NCBI GenBank assembly: GCA_021613535.1
Contig: CP075496.1
Span: 7,564,001-7,628,000, forward strand
Length of the DNA: 64,000 nucleotides
Origin: Adineta vaga
Lineage: Eukaryota > Animalia > Rotifera
Direction of reading: 5' to 3'
Shown: positions 34,221-51,192 of the stretch, piece after piece
How positions within the stretch are numbered: the stretch's first letter is position 1
Layout of the letters: each line of letters begins with the position of its first letter
Made by a program: the position numbers and the translations under genes
The notes under the pieces: generated by a model
Told to the model about the DNA's origin: nothing
The model's input: the letters and a program-made list of their open reading frames with translations, nothing else
The model's database searches: none

Positions 34221-37200
34221 ATGTCGATTGCATCGTCGTCGACGACGACTAAAAGTAAAAAGAAAGTAGTAAGTAAATAAACGAAAGAAAAAGTTAGATA
34301 TCAATGAATTAATTGCACAGGTTTGTTATATTCCAACATCAAATCAATTTGAAAATATTAAACCCATTGAAATAAAATGCTTTCCTAATGAAAATGAAGA
34401 AACCACTGTTGAAAGGTAAAAAATGATTTGTCTCTCGGAGTTTATTCAAAAAGTAAATTTTCATTGATAGTGAGAGAGAAAAAACAGATGGAACTGCAGC
34501 AATGGTAACTGTTGTCCCCCAACGAAAACGTCCATTTAGTGCTCCTTTACGAAAACCAACTGTACCGATAAAAACAGATACAACGGTTACAAAACCAATT
34601 CGTCATTTAGCAGTATTACCATCATCACAAAAACGGTCAACATCAGGATTTGCGAAACATGGAACTAATCTATCAGGTATGATTGATGAAAAAAAAGCAC
34701 TATTTTTCTCTTCATATATTTTAAATTGTAGAAACATTTACAATGTATGAAGGTCCAACGACAACACCAGCTATAGGTCGTTCACTCAATGATACAGTAA
34801 CAATGAAGTAAGTGTTTCGAGCTGTAAGTAAGTCTAAAGTGCAATTTGAAGTTAAAATTACATATAACCATAAGAATTCAGTATTAGATATATGAAATCA
34901 ATACTCAAAGAACAAAAGAATATTCGATGAAGGTTAAAAAGCCATTTAGTGCGCTTTCATCTGAACGAAAAAGAAATTCTTTTTGTTCTCATAAGGCTTT
35001 TTGATTTCATAGAAGTATAACGATTTCATAGGATTTAATTTTCTATTTATAATGATTACAAAAGTTGAATTAAATTATATTATGTACGTATGATTTTTCT
35101 TTGTCTTTTTCAGTCACCAATATCCAATGTCAGATTTGAAGTTAGTAAATATTTCTACTATTACTTCTTTTTAATATGATATATTTATATCTTTGTTATA
35201 GTTATCAATTACCAATGAATACCGAGCTTAACAATGATGATACTTATCTATGTAATGATACAACAGTATCAAGTGTATGCGAACTTCTTGATCAAGCCAC
35301 ATTGGTATGAAAGATAGTTCTGACTTTGGCGATTGTAAAATTTAATAGAGACTTCTTCATTATAAATAGGACGTTTCAATAAAATTAAACTTATTAATGC
35401 GCACGAGAAAAATTTGAAAAAAATTGTCAGTAAAGCGTTCAGAAAACTAAAACTTACTGGAAAGGAACGTCTTTTTAGTATTCATTACGCTACTAAAAAT
35501 AAATTAACATGTTTTTAGAGTTTTTCTTTTCAAGTTATGAAGAAATCTAGTTCAACTAAGTGTATCTATATATATTTAATTGCTATTTTCCTTGTATTAA
35601 CACATTTGACTAGTTGAAATCCAAATCCAAATGTCTGTTAAATAAATATTTTTGTTTCCTAATGGATTCTATGTGTAATGTAAAGTATTAGTTGTTTATA
35701 AAACAAACTCTGATCAAACAAAGATCAATCATCCGAAAATAATTGCGTTCATAATATATAAAGATTTCCTATGCAATAAATCGTTATTTCAATGATTAAA
35801 AGTTCGATTATTTTTAGAAACAAAAACCACATTCATTAATTGGTCGTTATCAATTACCTTCTACAGAAACGCCAACAACAAGTACAACAAAACCAATTCC
35901 TGCTGTTCATATAGCTACTGTACACTACGGTGAAATGCAACCAACAGAAACAGCGAATAAACAAGTTCTTGTTCAACAATTTTATAATCAATTAGAAAAA
36001 TTCAAAGCAACATTTAATACTGAAACATCTGAACCATTACATCAACTTACTACGAATACACTTACATTTGACAATGGTCTAGTAAGACAAACATTTGCAA
36101 CGAATCATCTGAAAGAAAAACCACCAATAGCACGAATATCAAGTGCAACTGTCAAACAGATTGATAAGAAGCCTGTTGTGCCTCAGGTATACAACATTTT
36201 AAATTTCAAAATTTTCATTAAAATTAGTGCAACAACTCTCGTAATTGAATGTATTAGAATGTAAATATAATTTTATCGAAAATACAGAAACAACTATTTC
36301 TTTCGGCGAAAGAGAAGACAACTATCTGTTTTTTATTATCACCAGTTACACAAACGGATTGATTCTGTCTTCAAACATTCGTAGATAATAAAACTGCACT
36401 TTTCTTTTCTTTTCTTTTCTTTCTTTCTTCAAATTGATATACAACATGAAACTTATCATCTATACTTTTCTTTTTTATTCGTATGAGTGCTTTCTAACAA
36501 GATGTCAAAGCTCATCAACAATGATGTTGCTATCGTATAAAATTAAAAGAATAGAGAGAAAAAAAGGAAGTACAGGCATTTGTATACTAAAGAAAGTGTT
36601 TTTTTTCTATTCGTAGAAACTTAAAGTAACAAAAAATCCATCAACTCGTATCCGATCTGCACCCATAACAATGACAACACGAACCAAAACAGAAATTAAA
36701 CGAAATTCTGTCTCATCATGTAAACAACATCGAAATGAGAAATTGCCAACTTCACAAAAGAAATCAATTCATACGAAAGATAAACAAATACGACGTGTTG
36801 GAAGTGCACCACCAAATCGTATTGATATTCATGGTCCTGAAGTAACCTTATTACCGCAAGATGAAGAAGAATGTCGACAAATTCATGACAAACTTCAACG
36901 TCTACAACCAAATGGTGTTTGTGTAGATTTAAATACATTACGTCGAGCACTTTATCCACCAATTGGAACAACAACCTTTTCAGCAACTCTTAATCATGAT
37001 CGAACATCAGCATTTAAATCGCTTCGTCAAGAGTGAGAAATATTCTGTTTTTGTGTTCTTTTAAGGAAAAAATCCATTTCTCTTTCCTTCTAGTACCGAC
37101 GAAATATCTCAATTGAGGATAAAAACCGATGATAAACATGTTTCAAAGCAATCAAATAAAAGTCACATGAATGCATATGATTCCAATCTTTTTCTTACAT

Positions 37201-37286
37201 CAGAAAATCCAAATCTTGATCGAATCGCTGATCAAATGAAAAAACATGCTGAAATCAACTATAGTTACTATACACGAACGAAATAG
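34221..37286 (+). CDS. Uncharacterized Thr/Ser/basic-rich protein, about 9 exons
   Basis: Exons with GT-AG boundaries link ORF pieces 34502, 35935 and 36671 (RPFSAP, RIRSAP, RRVGSAPP, VDLNTLRRALYPP); stop TAG at 37286. No family recognised. Confidence 0.6.
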
Positions 37287-37844
37287 AACAATATTTCTTT
37301 TCTCCTTGTGATATACATATCTTTTTGTATCGATATTCAATAAAGTATGATTCCAGTATAAACATAAACTTGTAAAAAAACTTTCCCAAGATACTCGACA
37401 CTCGAATTAAGTGTCAAAAAATAGTTTTGAGTGGAATTATAAAATTATCTAACTTATCACAATGATCTTTTTCATCAGCGTAATTAATTCATAGAGGGTG
37501 AGAAGGTCGATTTCGATTCAGTTATGAACATTTGTATTCAAAGATAGTATTTAGATAACATATGTTCAGTGTTTCGTTCGTATATATTTTATTCCGTGCT
37601 ATTTATTGTACTTGACTTTCTGTCACTTGTTTAAAACTATGAGAAAGCTCTTCGAAATGCATTGATGCGTCTCTAGTGAGGAAGAGAAGAATGTTTATAG
37701 TAGTTACATCATGCACATTACGAAATGTAGAGGGAAATCTCAATTCTATTTACTTAATATCCTGTATGTATTTTATGAAAATTATTTCTCTCAACCATGT
37801 GTGAAAATATGACTTTTAATCAAACAGAAACTATATTTTCTCTC

Positions 37845-37890
37845 TATATAAACATACATCCTTCATCAACATACTAGACAAAGCTCATTC
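37845..37890 (+). promoter_or_regulatory. TATA box and initiator of the peptide-precursor gene
   Basis: TATATAAA at 37845-37852 and TCATTC at 37885-37890, followed by a 5'UTR intron gtatgt(37927)...cattag(37981). Confidence 0.55.
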
Positions 37891-37984
37891 GAATATCATT
37901 TCGACACAGTAACAACTCTCAAACAAGTATGTTGTAATGATTTTTCTATAAGAATAAAGTGGTTATTATTCTATTCATTAGAAT

Positions 37985-38361
37985 ATGGTTCGATTGATTA
38001 CATTTAGTATAATCTTTTTCATTTTCCTCGTGTCTGTTCATATTAATGAAAGTAGACCAACGCGTATTCCATCAACAATACTTTCACGAATTTGGTCAAA
38101 AGATACTGGTTTTCCGCTCGAATATATGGTAAGTTGAAAATGTTGTTTTCTTCGGAAAGAAAAAGAATAGAGTGATATTCTTCTATAGGATCAGTCAGAT
38201 TCGTCAACAGATGATGTTCAACAATTAGCAGATAATGATCGACGAAAAAGAAGTAAATATATTGAACGAAGATAATAATCAATAATAATTTTGAATATTT
38301 AGGCTGTTTAACATTTGGCAGAAACAATGAACACCGAGCAGCTAAATGGATGTGTTGGTGA
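37985..38361 (+). CDS. Secreted prepro-peptide (neuropeptide/hormone-like precursor), 88 aa, 3 coding exons; not in the ORF track
   Basis: Exons 37985-38128, 38189-38252 and 38303-38361, with introns of 60 and 50 nt (GT-AG). Product: MVRLITFSIIFFIFLVSVHINES-RPTRIPSTILSRIWSKDTGFPLEYMDQSDSSTDDVQQLADND-RRKR-SCLTFGRNNEHRAAKWMCW*. AATAAA at 38396. Confidence 0.8.
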
Positions 38362-39063
38362 TATTAGAGACGTTTATCAAATTGGTTATTATTGAAATAA
38401 ATAAGAATAAAACAGATTTTTAAATGTTTTTATCCTTTGGTCAACTAATTTAAAGAACAGAGAATTCAAATAAATCATTTTCAAAAAAAAACCTATCCAT
38501 TTTTTGATATGAATCTTAATACAAATATACGCCCACTCGTATTATGAGACTTATTGATTGTCTATAAAATAGAGTGACAAAAAATTACAATGAACTATTC
38601 AGTGAAAGATCATGAGCGATTAAATATGCAACGTTTCGGAGACATTGACACTAACTCAGACATGTTATATCCGTTTTTAATTTGAATGCATTCTTAGTTT
38701 TTGCGTCAAGTGCAATTTTTGCATACAAGACAATGGAAAACTATTATGCGTGTTAATCATAGTAAAACGATTGTCAGGAAACACCTCCGTTCTGGAAATG
38801 ATTAGTATAGGTGAATATAACTCATTCAATTGTGCAAATGAAACAGATGTATTTATACTAGAAGAACTAACTAGAATAGTCATTATGCATTGTCTATATG
38901 TGAAGAGTAGATCATTGCATATGAAGTAACATCGTTGAATTTTATCCAGTAGTTTGTATATTATTTGTAAACTTGATTTAAGATTCCTAACAGTCAAATA
39001 TATAGTTTCATACATCATAAAAATAATAAAGCTGGATTTAGGAAATGAAAAAAAAAATAATGA

Positions 39064-44543
<5,480 letters not shown>

Positions 44544-45941
44544 GATCTATCACAAATAATAAAAAAATAAGAGTCTTTTTTATATACGACTTTTTTCGCT
44601 ATACACAAAAACCTTACATAGAATATACTATCTTGATTCTCTTCTATTTTTCTCGTACTACGATAGTCCCGTCCCTTTTCATCATTTCTTCTTTTTTCTT
44701 CTGTCAATCTTGCATTCTCTCATCTTCAGTTCTGTTTCTTTTCTACAATCAATGATATTTATACATTTATTTCTACTTCTATGGTTCAAGCTCGAAACAA
44801 TATATTTGTATATTCCATAGTTCGATGCAAATCATACGAAAAACAAAATATGAAATAACACTGACGAGAAGAAAAAACTCAGTTTTATTTGCCAAATAAT
44901 CAAAAATAAAAATCTGTCTTTTTTTGCATGCAATAAAAGACACATATTTTTGACGAGGAGAATATCAAATGAAAATAAATTTACTATATTATATTACGCA
45001 CAGAATGTATTTTTGAGGCAAAGTATATTGTTTTTATAGATCGAACAGTACGAAGAGTGATTAGCATGATTTGATAATTATTATGCAAATAGAAATTTGA
45101 TTAAATGTTTGCAAAAGAAAGATTAGTTGTTACCAGATATTCGATAAAAAAAGTACGAAATTTTTCATAAAAAACTTTCTCATGTAATCATATTGACGAT
45201 GTTTTAGTACTGAAAGGACGTTATAGTGTAAGATTCTTTCTGAATAACAAATAATTCAAACATATAATGAATTTTTTACATCACAAGAAAAGACATTATT
45301 GTCTATCAATTTTAACGTAGTGTACAATTAAAATTGACAATTGTATTTGTTTCTGAATATTGATTGACGGCGATGAAGTTTGAAACTTTCTTATTGTACT
45401 TTATAGAAAGTCTACTTTGTGTACCTTGAAATAAATACTACTGACCTTTGAAATTAATGTACGATAAAGATATGTAAAGGTATATTTTGATCCCTATTGC
45501 GATTTTGGAAGAAATATTATAGATTTATCAAATAATCTCTTGTTATTGGTCTGGAAAGCTCATCTTAAGTTACTTGTTTGCGCAAAGTTGATCTAGAAAA
45601 GATTCCATTTCAATTTACCTGAGTTAAATCAATCACACTTTCTCACTTTATATTTTTGTTGTAAGGATAAATATGAAAAATCAAAATGAGTATGAAGAGC
45701 TTGTCATTACTCGTTTCGAACAACGCCTTCTACCTATATCTTTGCATTTTTTCTGTCGTATTATATTTCGTTTGTTTCTAATCGGTTTTCTTGAGCTATT
45801 GTCTGTTGTAGTCGCATATCACGAAAATATTAAATCAATTGAGTTAATCTTTAACAAATAAGAAAGCAACTAGAATAAAAAGCGAATCAAATGCACGTTT
45901 CAATCATTGTGATTTTTTCGATTTTATTTATTACTATAACA

Positions 45942-48556
45942 ATGATTCTTGCATGGACTCTAACTCTCTTAACAATAGTCAGTCTTAGCACAAGTATTGA
46001 TGTACTTCTTCCAATATCAACAACAAAACCGGATTCAACATTTTATCCAAATGTTGTTCATCCACGTCAACCACAACGATTGAATTTAGGAAATAAGCAA
46101 GCGTTGCATACGAATAAATTCTACACCAATCCAATACTTGGCTCAGGTGAAAATCCGATTCTTGTACATCCATTTGTTTTGTTAATGAATCCTTCTTCAC
46201 CATTTGGTGTATCTATTTCTTGTACTGAACAATTGGCATTAGGACCGCAAATTGATAGTACACGAGTGAAATATTTCATCAATGTTATATTAAAAAATAT
46301 GCAAGTCAGTGCAACAGAATTCACTGCACAAAATTTTGAAGTAATTGATGTTGATGATCCTGGTTTTTCATTTACATTAAAAATGCGTCAACAAGGTTCA
46401 CAATCTTCAATTACTATGCCAGTTGTTCGTGGTATGGCTTATGTTACATTCGAATTCAATTCTGCAACACCGAAAATTTCAACAGCTCATGCTATTCTTT
46501 CAGTTAATGGTCAATCATCAGGAAGAATAACAAGTAAACGTTTTGAAGCTGTTTTAAACAATGGTCAAACTTGGATTATATATGCACTTAACGGAGAAAT
46601 AACACTAGAATTTCGTGATAATCAATTATTCGGTACACAAGCAATTACAAATGTTCTTCGTGTAACGAAAAAACAATCGGATGCATATGCCAATTCTCTT
46701 CTTGATTCACATGCTAGTGTTTATCCAACTGGTTGTCAATTGAGAGCAGATGTAACTGGTTCAAAAGGTACATATACATTTCTTTGGCAACGTAAAGGTG
46801 ATCTTAGTAAAACTTTACTTCATTATGCACTTGCTCATCATCGACAAGTAATCTCATCAAGTAGTGCAACAGCAACATCAGTACAATCAAAATCTTCAAG
46901 TAAAGGACCAATGGTTGGATATACTGGAAACACTTGGCTGATGGAGGAAAATTCTTTATCAACAATGGGCTTTCTTGCAGCACATCCACCTGCTCCACAA
47001 TATGAAAATTATATTGTAACACAATTAATAAAAGATATTAATGATGGAGTTAACTTAGGTGTAACAGATTATTATTTTACTGGTAAAGCTTTTCATAAAT
47101 ATGCATTATTATGTTTATTGGCTGATTATTATCGAGAAACAACATTACTAGATCAGTGTATCAAAAAATTAGAAGCAGGTTTTGATGTTTTGATTACAGG
47201 AAAAAATGGAAATGCGCTAAAATATGATACAACTTGGTATGGTCTTGTTTCTGCTGCTGGTTTAGCGTTTGTATTGATTTCTTTCTTTTGACAAATGATT
47301 ATGTTGATATTGAAATTTTAGACCCAATCAAGAATTAGCTGATTTTGGAAATTCATATTATAATGATCATCATTATCATTGGGGATATTTTATTCAAACG
47401 GGAGCTATTATTGCACATCTTGATTCAAGTTATATACCAAAAATGAAAAGTTGGATAGAAGGTTTGATTCGTGATTCAAATAATCCATCAACACAAGATA
47501 CACATTTTCCACAATTTCGTTATTTTGACTGGTATTCAGGACATAGTTGGAGTCAAGTAAAATAGATAATATCATTTCGATACATTTTTCTAAAGCAATT
47601 ATTCATTTAAGGGTTTATTTGAATCAGCTGATGGCAAAGATCAAGAATCTACATCAGAAGAAATAAATTATCATTATGGTTTAGCTTTATGGGGTTTAGC
47701 AACCAATTCAAAAACTACTGAAGGTCTAGGTCGTTTAATGTTAGCTATTGCTAAACGTTCTATTCAAACATACTTTCTTATGGATAGCGATAATAAAGTT
47801 ATGCCAAAAGAATTTATTGCTAATAAAGTAACAGGTATTTTCTTTGAAAATAAAGCTGATTATGCAACGTGGTTTGGTGCAAATCCAGAATTTATTCATG
47901 GTATTCAGTAAGTAGATACATAAATTAGAACAATAGGATATTTACTGAATTGTTTATATGAAAAAAAAAAGAATGCTTCCATCCACACCAATTACAGAAG
48001 AAGTTCGACTTCCAAAATTTGTCGAAGAAGAATGGAACACAATTGTCAGCAAAGTAGTTTCTGGTGCTGCAGGAGGATGGAAAAGTGTTCTATATACAAA
48101 TTATGCGATAATCAATCGAGGAGACGCATTCAATCAATTACTTACTGTACCACTTGATGATGGTTTAACACGTACTTGGGCTCTTGTAAATATCGATACA
48201 TTTATTTCTTCCCCTCTCCCCCCCTCAAAATTCATCCTTTCATTCGATTTTAGTATTGGGCAGCAACACGACCAAATACAAATGGTGGTAATGCAACCGG
48301 AACAACACCTAATCCATCATCGAGCACTACATCCGGTCCACCCGTAACTGGTGGTGAATGTACTCTACCTGCTGATGCTCCTTGTACATCATTAACTTCA
48401 CCAGGCGATGCTGCTGCTGGTCTTGGTATGTACTATGATGCTAGTTGTGCTCAAGGTGGTGTTGGTTGCAATCATATTAAACCTAACTGCCGTCTCTGTG
48501 CTAAAAATCCAGCAGTTATTAACGATCCTTTTCTTAAATGCCCTTCATGTGTTTAA
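45942..48556 (+). CDS. Secreted GH81 endo-1,3-beta-glucanase with C-terminal Cys-rich module (alternative in-frame ATG at 45891)
   Basis: Signal peptide; [98 protein letters not shown]. First exon about 1.3 kb, then 4 short introns. Confidence 0.93.
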
Positions 48557-48741
48557 TAAAACAAGTTATTTGTTTGTTTACTAATCGAAATATATCTTAA
48601 CACATAAAAACAAAAGAAACTTTGTATGTTACTATCAAATATTTATGTATATCTAATTATTGTTAGTGTATATCTGACATCATATTTATACAGTTCATCA
48701 AAAAAAAAGAAACTAACACTAATTAAAATCTGTGAATTGAA

Positions 48742-50389
48742 TTAAATAGAGCCATATGTTTTATTCCAATCTATAATATAAGTATGTGTTATAAGGCGAA
48801 TTCTTATTGTCAAAAAGAATGATTACCTTCATATTGTTTTAAATCGTTTTCTGAAACACTTGGTCGAATAGCTTTGAGCGATTTAATAAAATCTTCCGAT
48901 GAAATACCTCGTACCTGATTATCAATCGAATCAATTGATTACAATATATAAAACGACAAAGTTTATCTTACCTCATCACTGGAAAGTAATTCAATATCAT
49001 GTATATCTCGAATAGGTCCTAACGCAGCATCATGACAAAGACTATGCATATCAGCACCACTAAAACCTTCTGTAAGTGTACATATATGTTCTATATCAGT
49101 AGTAGTTAAAGTATGTTTTTGATCTCGAAGTAAATTTGAAATAATAGCTTGTCGAGCTGCTAAATCAGGTAAAGGAATATAAATACGTTTAACAAAACGT
49201 CGACGAGCTGCTGAATCAAGTTCTTGTGGTCTTAATATTCAAAATAGTCAGTAATTAAAAATACGAATGGTTCTATCGTTTAGATGAATTACCGATTAGT
49301 AGCACCAATCAATAGAATTCGTTCTTCACCTTGAGTACTTGCTCCATCCTATAATAGATAATACTCTTAAACGCACGTATATAATTTAAAAAAGAACTTA
49401 CAATTTGTACAAGAAATTCTGTTTTTATTCGACGTGTACTTTCATCTTCATTTTCTGATCGTTCTTGAAGTAAGGAATCCACTTCATCAATGAAAATCAC
49501 TGATGGTTGACGTGAACGAGCGACAGCAAATAGTGCTCGAACTAATTTTTCACTTTCACCATGCCATTTTGACGTTAAGGATGATGATGAAACACAAAAG
49601 AAAGTTGCTTTCGACTGACTAGCAATACATTTACCAATCAACGTTTTTCCAGTTCCTATTCTTACGAAAATACAAATATGTTGAAACGAAAAATGAATTT
49701 TGAATAGAGTTGTACCTGGTGGACCAAAAAGAAGTAAACCTTTTGGTGGTCTTCTTAAACCGGTAAATATATCAGGTCGTTGCATAGGCCATACAACAAT
49801 TTCTGTAATAGATCGTTTAGCATCATTTAAACCAGCAATATCATTCCATGTTGTCGTTAAATTCAATTCCATAATCTACATAATAGATAAAAATGTCATC
49901 TATATCACTGAATCAGAGGGACTATTTTTGACGATATGTAATAGTTTTGTTTTAAAAAATGAAAATTACCTCACTAGTTATCATTTCGATCAATTTTGAA
50001 TCAATGTGTTTGGCACCACCACTTTCTTCTAATTTATTGTTGGAAGTGTCCGTATTATTAGATTGATTCGTTTGCAAAACAGGCGCTACTGATGTTGGTG
50101 GTGGCGGTGGTGGTGGTGCAGGTTGCGTAAGTTGTCGATTTGGATCATTCTGTACTTGACGTCCAGCAGTAGGATCAACATACCGATTGTATATAGATCG
50201 TCTATGTTTAGAATACAAATTCTTGCATTCATTATATGTCATAAACATTGAACTTACTTCGCAGATGAATGCATACCAAGCGATTTTTTAACAACACCAC
50301 CATTCGTTTTTGTACGCGCGTCGTCGATCTCTAATTGATCACGTGCTGTACGAAATGATAATGAGTCTGGTACAGCTGATGCTTGCTGC

Positions 50390-50420
<31 letters not shown>

Positions 50421-51192
50421 GCTGCTGCTGTACTTGTTGTTTACCAAATGGTGGTCGATAATGATGGCTTGTACCAGTATCCATTGTTTCATCCGAAAAA
50501 CAAGCAGGAGCTGGACGTTTCTAAACGAAAAAAAAATTTAGGATTCTAATTATACGTAATTATAGGATTCTTACTTTATTAAATGTTGGTGGTTGATTGT
50601 CGATTGCTGATGGCGTTTTTGGTGTTTTCATTGAAAGTAAGTTAATTTGACCAGCTAGAGGATTTCGACCATCTCTATGACCTTTAAATAATGGTCTAAT
50701 TTTGTCATTCATCTATCGAAAGAAACAGTTAAAAAAGCAAATAGGAATGACATCTTACCATCTGCTGACGAATATTAGTATCATTTATTTGAGACCAATT
50801 GATACATTGTGAGAAAGAGACTACAAAAGAAAACCTATAAAAAATGGATATTTTTAAAAAAAAGAAGAGGACTGACTACGATGATTTTTATCTGTTTGTT
50901 TGTGAACATTTTTATTAAATGGTCTTGTTGCCCAATATAATGCAATAGAACGATCAGCAAATTGATTAATAACTTGTACTGGCAATCTTAAATCAACAAG
51001 AAATAGAATATATAGAATGATAATCAAAATAACAAACTGTGTGGTTTGTCTCCATGCATCCAATAGAATAAGTTGAACACGTCTATGATGACTACACACG
51101 TCAATATTACGTTTATCACGTTCCAATGATGCTTCTTCATATAACCACCATTCATATATTTGACAATCAAGAGATGACATATCTAGTATCAT
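48742..51192 (-). CDS. FIGNL1: Fidgetin-like 1 AAA ATPase
   Basis: [14 protein letters not shown]; [53 protein letters not shown]; FIDEVDSLL; [15 protein letters not shown]; ends WIKTYGSI*. Confidence 0.93.
50383..50430 (-). repeat. Coding (CAA/CAG)n polyglutamine tract, about 16 Q, in FIGNL1
   Basis: Plus strand shows a ttg/ctg run, in frame in the exon of ORF 50254..50484. Confidence 0.9.

What the first reader, a model, noticed from the sequence alone, without database searches (positions are those of the whole stretch)
37845..38401. Hidden, complete prepro-peptide gene encoding a 17-residue disulfide-ring peptide
Seen in sequence: a region the ORF track leaves essentially empty on the plus strand contains a full gene. 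It has a TATA box (37845), a 5'UTR intron (37927-37981), three coding exons whose GT-AG introns keep phase, and AATAAA (38396). The 88-aa product has a hydrophobic signal peptide, an acidic spacer (DQSDSSTDDVQQLADND), a furin/PC site RRKR and one C-terminal mature peptide, SCLTFGRNNEHRAAKWMCW. Established: this layout (a single cyclic peptide at the precursor end) is that of the somatostatin/allatostatin-C, MCH and natriuretic families. Cys-x15-Cys equals the ring size of vertebrate ANP/BNP/CNP. Inference: I do not recognise the peptide, so it may be an undescribed rotifer/spiralian signalling or defence peptide. The natriuretic likeness (SC, FG.R, E.R) is weak, does not match the CFGxxxDRI register, and may be coincidence.
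Basis: partly seen in the sequence, partly recalled or inferred. Interest (0 to 1): 0.85.

Follow-up and report, generated by a model that had tools for sequence, protein, structure and literature searches.

The report
Conserved rotifer ring-peptide precursor gene
This is a real, transcribed and unannotated gene of a bdelloid rotifer that encodes a small secreted precursor. Its only strongly conserved part is a 19-residue peptide closed into a 17-residue disulfide ring, most likely an undescribed signalling peptide.

Summary
Spliced, polyadenylated RNA-like contigs from three separate studies carry all three predicted introns exactly. The product is an 88-residue prepropeptide: signal peptide, acidic spacer, RRKR, then a C-terminal 19-mer with Cys-x15-Cys.

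- The poly(A) site in use is at 38491, with its signal at 38469-38474, not the one at 38396.
- The TATA box and transcription start remain unproven.

The gene belongs to a family:
- A second copy lies in the collinear block of the homoeologous chromosome (C1). It is annotated as an Adineta vaga hypothetical protein.
- Orthologues of both copies occur in Rotaria and in several environmental bdelloid contigs, 11 sequences in all.
- All 11 share the same exon plan, an R-x-[KR]-R cleavage site, the same ring size and an invariant K-W-M-C-W ending followed by a stop.
- Selection is concentrated on the peptide (dN/dS about 0.04-0.4), against 0.3-1.5 for the rest of the precursor.

The window's own copy appears in none of the protein collections searched. 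No Pfam family, solved structure or paper matches it. The natriuretic likeness is coincidental.

My best reading is an orphan bdelloid peptide hormone or neuropeptide (about 0.6). A defence peptide is the main rival.

The parts
37845..37852 (+). TATA-like TATATAAA; a possible core promoter, not proven
   Evidence: Sequence. The contig 5' ends lie at 37856, 37867, 37876 and 37890, and contigs cannot define a transcription start.
37856..37926 (+). 5'UTR exon, as far as the contigs reach; it has no ATG
   Evidence: table 8 (X1 record 2); sequence.
37927..37981 (+). 5'UTR intron, 55 nt, GT..AG, ending 3 nt before the ATG
   Evidence: Joint 37926/37982 in X1, X4 (two contigs) and X8. An intron in the same position is visible in the orthologues L150, L153 and L154.
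37985..38128 (+). Coding exon 1, 48 codons. It holds the signal peptide (about residues 1-23, 37985-38053) and the start of the pro-region, with the conserved N-E-S then [KR]-P.
   Evidence: The signal peptide was judged by eye (basic residue 3, 15-residue hydrophobic core); SignalP was not available.
38129..38188 (+). Intron, 60 nt, GT..AG, phase 0
   Evidence: Joint found in three studies. Position and phase are the same in all nine gene models (window, L004, L010, L021, L026; L150, L153, L154; L156 read by eye). L158 holds only the end of exon 1.
38189..38252 (+). Coding exon 2, 64 nt. It holds the acidic spacer, the RRKR site (38240-38251) and the first base of the Ser codon.
   Evidence: Exon length is 64 nt in eight of the nine full gene models (67 nt in L004); R-x-[KR]-R is present in all 11 sequences.
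38253..38302 (+). Intron, 50 nt, GT..AG, phase 1
   Evidence: Joint 38252/38303 in three studies.
38303..38361 (+). Coding part of the last exon, 59 nt. It encodes the 19-residue mature peptide (Ser, then Cys-x15-Cys, then Trp) and the TGA stop.
   Evidence: This coding stretch measures exactly 59 nt in every copy for which it was measured.
38362..38491 (+). 3'UTR, with AATAAA at 38469-38474 and poly(A) addition after 38491
   Evidence: Loose A-runs behind 38491 in X1 and X8 (table 7).

Best explanation
The gene makes a polyadenylated mRNA of about 470 nt and an 88-residue prepropeptide. Shown: transcription, splicing, polyadenylation, the reading frame, and purifying selection focused on the C-terminal peptide across bdelloid species and across both ancient gene copies. 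Inferred: the signal peptide sends the precursor into the secretory pathway and is removed near residue 23. A furin/prohormone-convertase type enzyme then cuts after RRKR (residues 66-69). The released 19-mer closes a Cys2-Cys18 disulfide into a 17-residue ring, with one residue outside the ring at each end and a free C-terminal Trp. Most likely the peptide is an extracellular signal, a neuropeptide or hormone, read by a specific and still unknown receptor. The invariant K-W-M-C-W tail and the fixed ring size would be the recognition element. The window's gene (type 1) and its homoeologue on C1 (type 2) would be two related ligands retained since the bdelloid genome duplication.
For: - RNA: three studies show all joints and the poly(A) tail.
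- Homoeologue: same exon plan, in a collinear block on C1. PMC8494291 states that chromosome 1 is homoeologous to chromosome 4.
- Only these two loci exist in the genome.
- Type 2: orthologues in three environmental species found by pattern scan, in Rotaria magnacalcarata and one metagenome contig by profile search, and in Rotaria sordida through synteny.
- Type 1: orthologues in three environmental species, found through the conserved upstream neighbour gene and with an ABC transporter downstream as in the window.
- Ten-peptide alignment A3: C1, K14, W15, M16, C17 and W18 are invariant, and the ring size never changes.
- Type 2 mature part: dN 0.02-0.09 against dS 0.5-1.9. Exons 1-2: dN/dS about 0.5-1.
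- Type 1 mature part: dN/dS 0.04-0.42, against 0.3-1.5 for exons 1-2.
- Adineta versus Rotaria type 2: 16 of 19 mature residues identical, against about 30% in the pro-region.
- All 11 sequences have an R-x-[KR]-R site, and the genome holds at least 8 loci with a proprotein-convertase P domain.
- Language-model neighbours of the type-2 precursor are mostly peptide-hormone precursors, at scores of 0.81-0.85. This is a weak lead only.
- Worm antimicrobial peptides of similar shape are reported to be hypervariable between species (PMC6780910), unlike this peptide.
Against: - No peptide has been detected, no producing cell type is known and no receptor is known.
- The peptide is not amidated. It is cationic (+2 to +4) and rich in Trp, which also suits a membrane-active defence peptide.
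- The window's own copy is the most divergent type-1 sequence inside the ring (9-10 of 18 residues shared with its orthologues), so it is less constrained than type 2.
- The runs are only guessed to be RNA. The splicing and A-tails support that, but expression level and tissue cannot be read from contigs.
- Nothing was found outside Bdelloidea, so there is no link to a known receptor system.
Confidence: 0.6

Rival explanations
1. It is a host-defence peptide, antibacterial or antifungal. The acidic pro-region masks a cationic, Trp-rich, disulfide-stapled hairpin that is released by furin and attacks microbial membranes, as annelid arenicins do.
For: The layout is an acidic spacer followed by a cationic C-terminal peptide. 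Net charge runs from +2 to +4, with two Trp and one Tyr/Phe. Arenicin-1 is a 21-mer with one end-to-end disulfide that also ends in Cys-Trp (PMC6780910). A furin-type R-x-K-R site is typical of constitutively secreted peptides.
Against: The peptide is almost unchanged between Adineta and Rotaria, with dN/dS down to 0.04. The AMP parts of worm BRICHOS precursors are described as highly diverse between species. Charge is well below arenicin's +6, and the window copy carries an acidic residue. There is no BRICHOS or other carrier domain. Each type exists as a single gene, with no tandem expansion.
Confidence: 0.2
2. It is a very divergent member of an already named bilaterian ring-peptide family (somatostatin/allatostatin-C/urotensin II, MCH or natriuretic peptides) and not a new family.
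For: The precursor logic is the same: one non-amidated ring peptide at the very C-terminus after a basic site. The ring size equals that of natriuretic peptides. Cys-Trp follows the ring as in MCH (from my own knowledge). Consomatin and urotensin clusters are among the language-model neighbours.
Against: No Pfam family reaches E = 10 or better for any exon or for the two full-length type-2 precursors, apart from one unrelated weak hit. The profile finds nothing among solved structures. The F-G-R motif occurs in one of ten peptides, and there is no D-R-I, S-G-L-G or F-W-K motif. The ring size differs from somatostatin, urotensin and MCH.
Confidence: 0.07
3. It is a secreted peptide with some other extracellular role, such as a toxin against prey or competitors, an enzyme inhibitor, or a cue between individuals.
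For: Secretion and processing signals are present and the ring peptide is conserved. Nothing ties it to neurons.
Against: There is no similarity to any toxin or inhibitor family. Bdelloids are filter or scraper feeders with no known venom (from my own knowledge).
Confidence: 0.1
4. The reading frame is a chance ORF in a non-coding or otherwise functioning transcript.
For: The ORF is short (88 codons) in AT-rich DNA. The window's product is absent from the protein collections searched.
Against: Exon lengths, intron phases, the start codon, the cleavage site, both Cys and the stop position are kept in 11 sequences, while synonymous sites are near saturation.
Confidence: 0.02

Closest known systems
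Somatostatin / allatostatin-C / urotensin II type precursors (including cone-snail consomatins)
   Same: A small precursor with a signal peptide, a poorly conserved spacer, a basic cleavage site and a single non-amidated disulfide-ring peptide at the extreme C-terminus. These clusters appear among the language-model neighbours of the type-2 precursor.
   Different: Their rings have 6-8 residues, against 17 here. There is no F-W-K or allatostatin-C motif and no Pfam match.
Natriuretic peptides (ANP/BNP/CNP)
   Same: A 17-residue disulfide ring lying at or near the C-terminus of the precursor.
   Different: The C-F-G...D-R-I...S-G-L-G-C signature is absent. The only shared letters (F-G-R) occur in the A. 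vaga type-1 copy alone and not in the nine other peptides. There is no Pfam match.
Melanin-concentrating hormone
   Same: A 19-residue ring peptide at the precursor's C-terminus after a dibasic site, with Trp directly after the second Cys (from my own knowledge).
   Different: MCH has a 10-residue ring, a much longer precursor and two further residues after the Trp. The family is known only from deuterostomes. There is no Pfam match.
CCWamide / agatoxin-like peptides (PMC8557429)
   Same: [quoted passage not shown]
   Different: Those peptides have eight Cys and an amidated end, and their intron lies inside the basic codon. Here there are two Cys, a stop directly after Trp, and a phase-1 intron one base after the basic site.
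Arenicins (annelid BRICHOS-linked antimicrobial hairpins, PMC6780910)
   Same: About 20 residues, one disulfide joining the two ends, ending in Cys-Trp, cut from the C-terminus of an acidic precursor.
   Different: Arenicin carries charge +6, has a roughly 200-residue BRICHOS precursor (length from my own knowledge) and varies strongly between species. Here the charge is +2 to +4, there is no carrier domain, and conservation is strong.

Membership tests
Natriuretic peptides | 17-residue disulfide ring | tested here: met
   Cys-x15-Cys in all ten aligned peptides.
Natriuretic peptides | Ring signature C-F-G-x3-D-R-I-x3-S-G-L-G-C | tested here: not met
   Alignment A3 shows no D-R-I and no S-G-L-G, and F-G-R in only one of ten peptides. 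No Pfam family at E = 10 or better.
Natriuretic peptides | Activates a receptor guanylyl cyclase | not testable with these tools
   Needs a receptor assay.
Somatostatin / allatostatin-C / urotensin II | Single ring peptide at the precursor's C-terminus after a basic site | tested here: met
Somatostatin / allatostatin-C / urotensin II | Ring of 6-8 residues with the F-W-K or allatostatin-C core motif | tested here: not met
   The ring has 17 residues and the motifs are absent. No Pfam match.
Melanin-concentrating hormone | 10-residue ring (Cys-x8-Cys) with the conserved G-R-V-Y-R-P core | tested here: not met
   no Pfam match. The MCH motif is taken from my own knowledge.
CCWamide / agatoxin-like peptide | Eight conserved Cys and an amidated aromatic C-terminus | tested here: not met
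   Two Cys, and a stop codon directly after Trp with no Gly. Family definition from PMC8557429.
Excitatory peptide / CCHamide | Peptide directly after the signal peptide, with a short ring and an amidated end | tested here: not met
   Here the peptide is at the C-terminus and not amidated. Rotifer EP is already described and differs (PMC6617912).
BRICHOS-linked antimicrobial peptides (arenicin type) | BRICHOS domain in the pro-region | tested here: not met
   No Pfam hit in any exon or in P0001 and P0006. The precursor has only 82-88 residues.
Generic secreted prohormone / neuropeptide precursor | N-terminal signal peptide | tested here: inconclusive
   All exon-1 translations show a basic residue, a 14-16-residue hydrophobic core and a conserved polar end. 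No signal-peptide predictor was available.
Generic secreted prohormone / neuropeptide precursor | Conserved convertase site, with conservation concentrated on the released peptide | tested here: met
   R-x-[KR]-R in 11 of 11 sequences. dN/dS is far lower in the mature part than in the pro-region.
Generic secreted prohormone / neuropeptide precursor | Made in neurons or endocrine cells; mature peptide detectable; has a cognate receptor | not testable with these tools
   Needs in situ hybridisation, peptidomics and receptor screens.

The most novel reading that the evidence does not exclude
The K-W-M-C-W ring peptides are the rotifer (gnathiferan) descendants of an ancient bilaterian ring-peptide system, of somatostatin/allatostatin-C/urotensin/MCH type or a natriuretic-like ligand of a receptor guanylyl cyclase, with a ring enlarged to 17 residues. 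That would extend one of those systems into a phylum where it is unknown.
Probability: 0.07. Interest if true: 0.75.

Novelty: new member of a known kind. Interest (0 to 1): 0.5.

Why it matters
Rotifer peptide signalling is barely charted. A 2021 survey calls gnathiferans the next frontier (PMC8557429), and a 2024 preprint found only families that already have arthropod models. This report adds an orphan family with two ancient paralogues. It has a precisely defined mature peptide that is short enough to synthesise, and an invariant five-residue tail that suggests a specific receptor. That gives a concrete ligand for receptor deorphanisation in an asexual, desiccation-tolerant model animal. 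It also shows that small three-exon peptide genes are missed by the current annotation of this genome: one of the two copies is not annotated at all.

Tried and rejected
- A DNA search of the window's own genome finds only the locus itself. The homoeologue is visible only at the peptide level.
- The third hit of the profile in the own genome (C2, E 5.3) was taken as chance.
- A word-based protein search with the exon-1 reading frame (51 residues) found nothing.
- The same DNA pattern scanned over prokaryotic genome contigs gave 18 matches, and a looser pattern over viral contigs gave 80. None had the ring Cys in an open frame, so they serve as chance controls, as do the 19 high-GC matches in the metagenome scan.
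- That first pattern required R-A before the tail. It therefore missed the type-1 orthologues, which were recovered through synteny.
- Hits P0004 and P0005 of the profile search are repeat proteins and were taken as chance.
- Pfam and the solved-structure sequences gave nothing.
- CCHamide and CCWamide were considered and rejected from their published definitions.
- The bacterial-type promoter scan is uninformative here.
- Run X10 is unspliced DNA of a near relative and gives no RNA evidence.
- No structure was predicted, because the Atlas model of the type-2 precursor has a mean pLDDT of only 0.53.
- Joined step left out: the three coding exons of the window's gene were never joined for any search or fold and were searched exon by exon by reference. 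No signal-peptide tool or full-length search was therefore run on the type-1 product. The full-length type-2 proteins came from the database.
- For the profile search, the first row was the 31-residue open frame that runs from intron sequence into exon 3 (window:38266-38358). The 13 intron-derived columns did not become profile positions.

Full report
WHAT IS THERE

- An ATG at 37985 opens a 48-codon exon ending at 38128.
- A 64-base exon at 38189-38252 encodes an acidic spacer ending in RRKR.
- The last exon starts at 38303. It completes a Ser codon and then encodes Cys, 15 residues, Cys, Trp and a TGA stop at 38359-38361.
- Both coding introns are GT..AG, 60 and 50 bases long, in phases 0 and 1. 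The 5'UTR exon has no ATG.

The product has 88 residues. The mature peptide has 19, and the ring spans 17.

IS IT EXPRESSED?

One search for public runs gave runs from six studies. Several held about 0.3-0.4 of the sampled words, which is what a spliced transcript would give.

I laid four of these runs on 36600-39300. Contigs from X1, X4 and X8, three different studies, skip 37927-37981, 38129-38188 and 38253-38302 exactly. In X1 and X8 they end in a run of A after 38491. This is a spliced, polyadenylated plus-strand transcript of about 470 bases.

The contigs' 5' ends lie between 37856 and 37890. One begins 4 bases after the TATATAAA at 37845-37852, so the TATA assignment stays open.

The fourth run, X10, gave unspliced pieces and is DNA of a near relative. 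The tool marks the other runs as RNA only by guess. Splicing and A-tails argue that they are RNA, but contigs cannot give expression level or tissue.

WHICH GENOME?

The assembly has 100.8 Mb in six contigs, and the window lies on C4. A protein found later, UJR14798.1, is named hypothetical protein I4U23_001785 of Adineta vaga. It sits on a contig of 18,146,847 bases, which is exactly the length of C1 here. I therefore take the genome to be the chromosome-level A. vaga assembly described in PMC8494291.

A SECOND COPY

A search of the own genome with the 18-residue ring gave a weak hit on C1. Reading that locus shows the same gene plan: a signal-peptide exon, a phase-0 intron of 60 bases, a spacer exon ending in RQKR, a phase-1 intron of 51 bases, and a 59-base coding stretch for Asn, Cys-x15-Cys, Trp and a stop.

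A profile of the two rings finds only these two loci in the genome.

A translated comparison of the window with 39 kb of C1 shows long collinear blocks on both sides of the gene. PMC8494291 states that chromosomes 1, 2 and 3 are homoeologous to 4, 5 and 6. The two genes are therefore copies retained from the old bdelloid genome duplication. I call the window's gene type 1 and the C1 gene type 2.

OTHER SPECIES

- Metagenome pattern scan. A degenerate DNA pattern for the shared tail gave 24 matches. Five lie in low-GC contigs (three are the same sequence), have the ring Cys in frame, and show the full three-exon gene. These contigs are collinear with the C1 block and carry type-2 peptides.
- Profile search. 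An exhaustive search of 1.84 billion representative proteins found three true members: the A. vaga type-2 protein, identical to my manual model; two gene models from Rotaria magnacalcarata; and one metagenome ORF that reads through the intron.
- What the profile search did not find. The window's own peptide would score 50.6 bits at that database size (E 1.4e-8), but it is not there. The word-based search with exon 1 also found nothing. Type 1 is thus unannotated in those collections.
- Synteny route to type 1. I searched with the first exon of the upstream neighbour gene, fetched contigs carrying its relatives and scanned them for the ring. Three further species carry type-1 genes downstream of that neighbour and upstream of an ABC transporter, as in the window. 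Their coding exons measure 144, 64 and 59 bases, as in the window, and they have an intron 3 bases before the ATG.
- Rotaria sordida carries a type-2 gene in the same position.

PATTERN OF SELECTION

In the alignment of ten mature peptides (A3), the first Cys and the last five residues, K-W-M-C-W, never change. Tyr/Phe at position 4 and Arg at 11 are nearly constant. The ring length is fixed, and a stop always follows the Trp. All 11 sequences have R-x-[KR]-R before the peptide.

| Comparison | Mature part | Rest of the precursor |
|---|---|---|
| Type-2 orthologues | dN 0.02-0.09, dS 0.5-1.9 | dN/dS about 0.5-1 |
| Type-1 orthologues | dN/dS 0.04-0.42 | dN/dS 0.3-1.5 |
| A. vaga vs Rotaria magnacalcarata, type 2 | 16 of 19 residues identical | about 30% identical |

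The A. vaga type-1 copy is the most divergent inside the ring. The three sequence variants seen in the transcripts fall in the signal peptide, the pro-region and the 3'UTR, and none falls in the peptide.

HOW IT MOST LIKELY WORKS

Secretion, signal-peptide removal near the conserved N-E-S then [KR]-P, convertase cleavage after the basic site, and closure of the single possible disulfide are all inferred from the sequence. The genome holds at least eight loci with a proprotein-convertase P domain.

Several features fit a ligand read by a specific receptor better than a membrane-active defence peptide:
- strong, position-specific conservation of a short tail;
- a fixed ring size between genera whose synonymous sites are near saturation;
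- two single-copy paralogues with no tandem expansion.

The closest worm defence peptides of similar shape are reported as hypervariable between species and carry charge +6 (PMC6780910). The language-model neighbours of the type-2 precursor are mostly peptide-hormone precursors, but at scores the tool itself calls leads only.

I put signalling at about 0.6 and defence at 0.2.

COMPARISON WITH KNOWN FAMILIES

No Pfam family reaches E = 10 or better for any exon, nor for the full type-2 precursors apart from one unrelated weak hit. Nothing matches among solved structures.

- The natriuretic likeness rests on ring size and on F-G-R, which only this one copy has.
- Somatostatin-type, urotensin and MCH peptides share the precursor logic but not the ring size or motifs.
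- CCWamide has eight Cys and is amidated.
- Rotifer CCHamide is already known and sits directly after the signal peptide.

The tail motif occurs in no held paper. It is also absent from the supplements of the two surveys that covered rotifers.

LIMITS

- No signal-peptide or cleavage predictor was available.
- The taxonomic range outside Bdelloidea is untested at useful sensitivity, because an 18-position profile cannot reach distant relatives in a library of this size.
- RNA evidence was obtained for type 1 only.

VERDICT

This is a real, expressed and conserved gene, unannotated for this copy. It represents an undescribed bdelloid family of ring-peptide precursors. That makes it a new member of a familiar kind of system: solid and useful, but not startling.

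Noticed in passing
window 36671-37362 (+): A small two-exon gene lies upstream of the peptide gene, with its own poly(A) tail at 37362. It has 42 relatives in bdelloid-like metagenome contigs and in Rotaria, none with a Pfam family on record. The RNA contig joint 37030/37094 has odd ends (GA..AG, with two extra letters), so the exact intron borders are unclear.
   Followed up: partly
window 36671-37362 versus G000:C1:5628000-5666999; L010, L026, L156: In Rotaria sordida and two environmental species, the upstream neighbour gene sits beside the type-2 peptide gene. In A. vaga it is seen only beside type 1 on C4, and no counterpart appears in the C1 block. This looks like a loss of one copy after the genome duplication.
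   Followed up: partly
window about 39000-51000 (-): A cluster of ABCC-type transporter genes lies directly downstream of the peptide gene and has no counterpart in the collinear C1 block. An ABC transporter ORF also lies downstream of the type-1 orthologues in L150, L151, L154 and L155, so this neighbourhood is old.
   Followed up: no
window 37560-39300, run X10: A run labelled as a different organism holds unspliced 151-base pieces that are 97-98% identical to the window. It is DNA of a close relative or strain, not RNA.
   Followed up: no
L158 97-279; L156 8218-8542: Public gene models of family members are often wrong. The metagenome ORF P0003 reads through the last intron. One Rotaria magnacalcarata model (P0002) lacks most of the signal peptide. 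The Rotaria sordida model has 68 residues where the three exons give about 83.
   Followed up: partly
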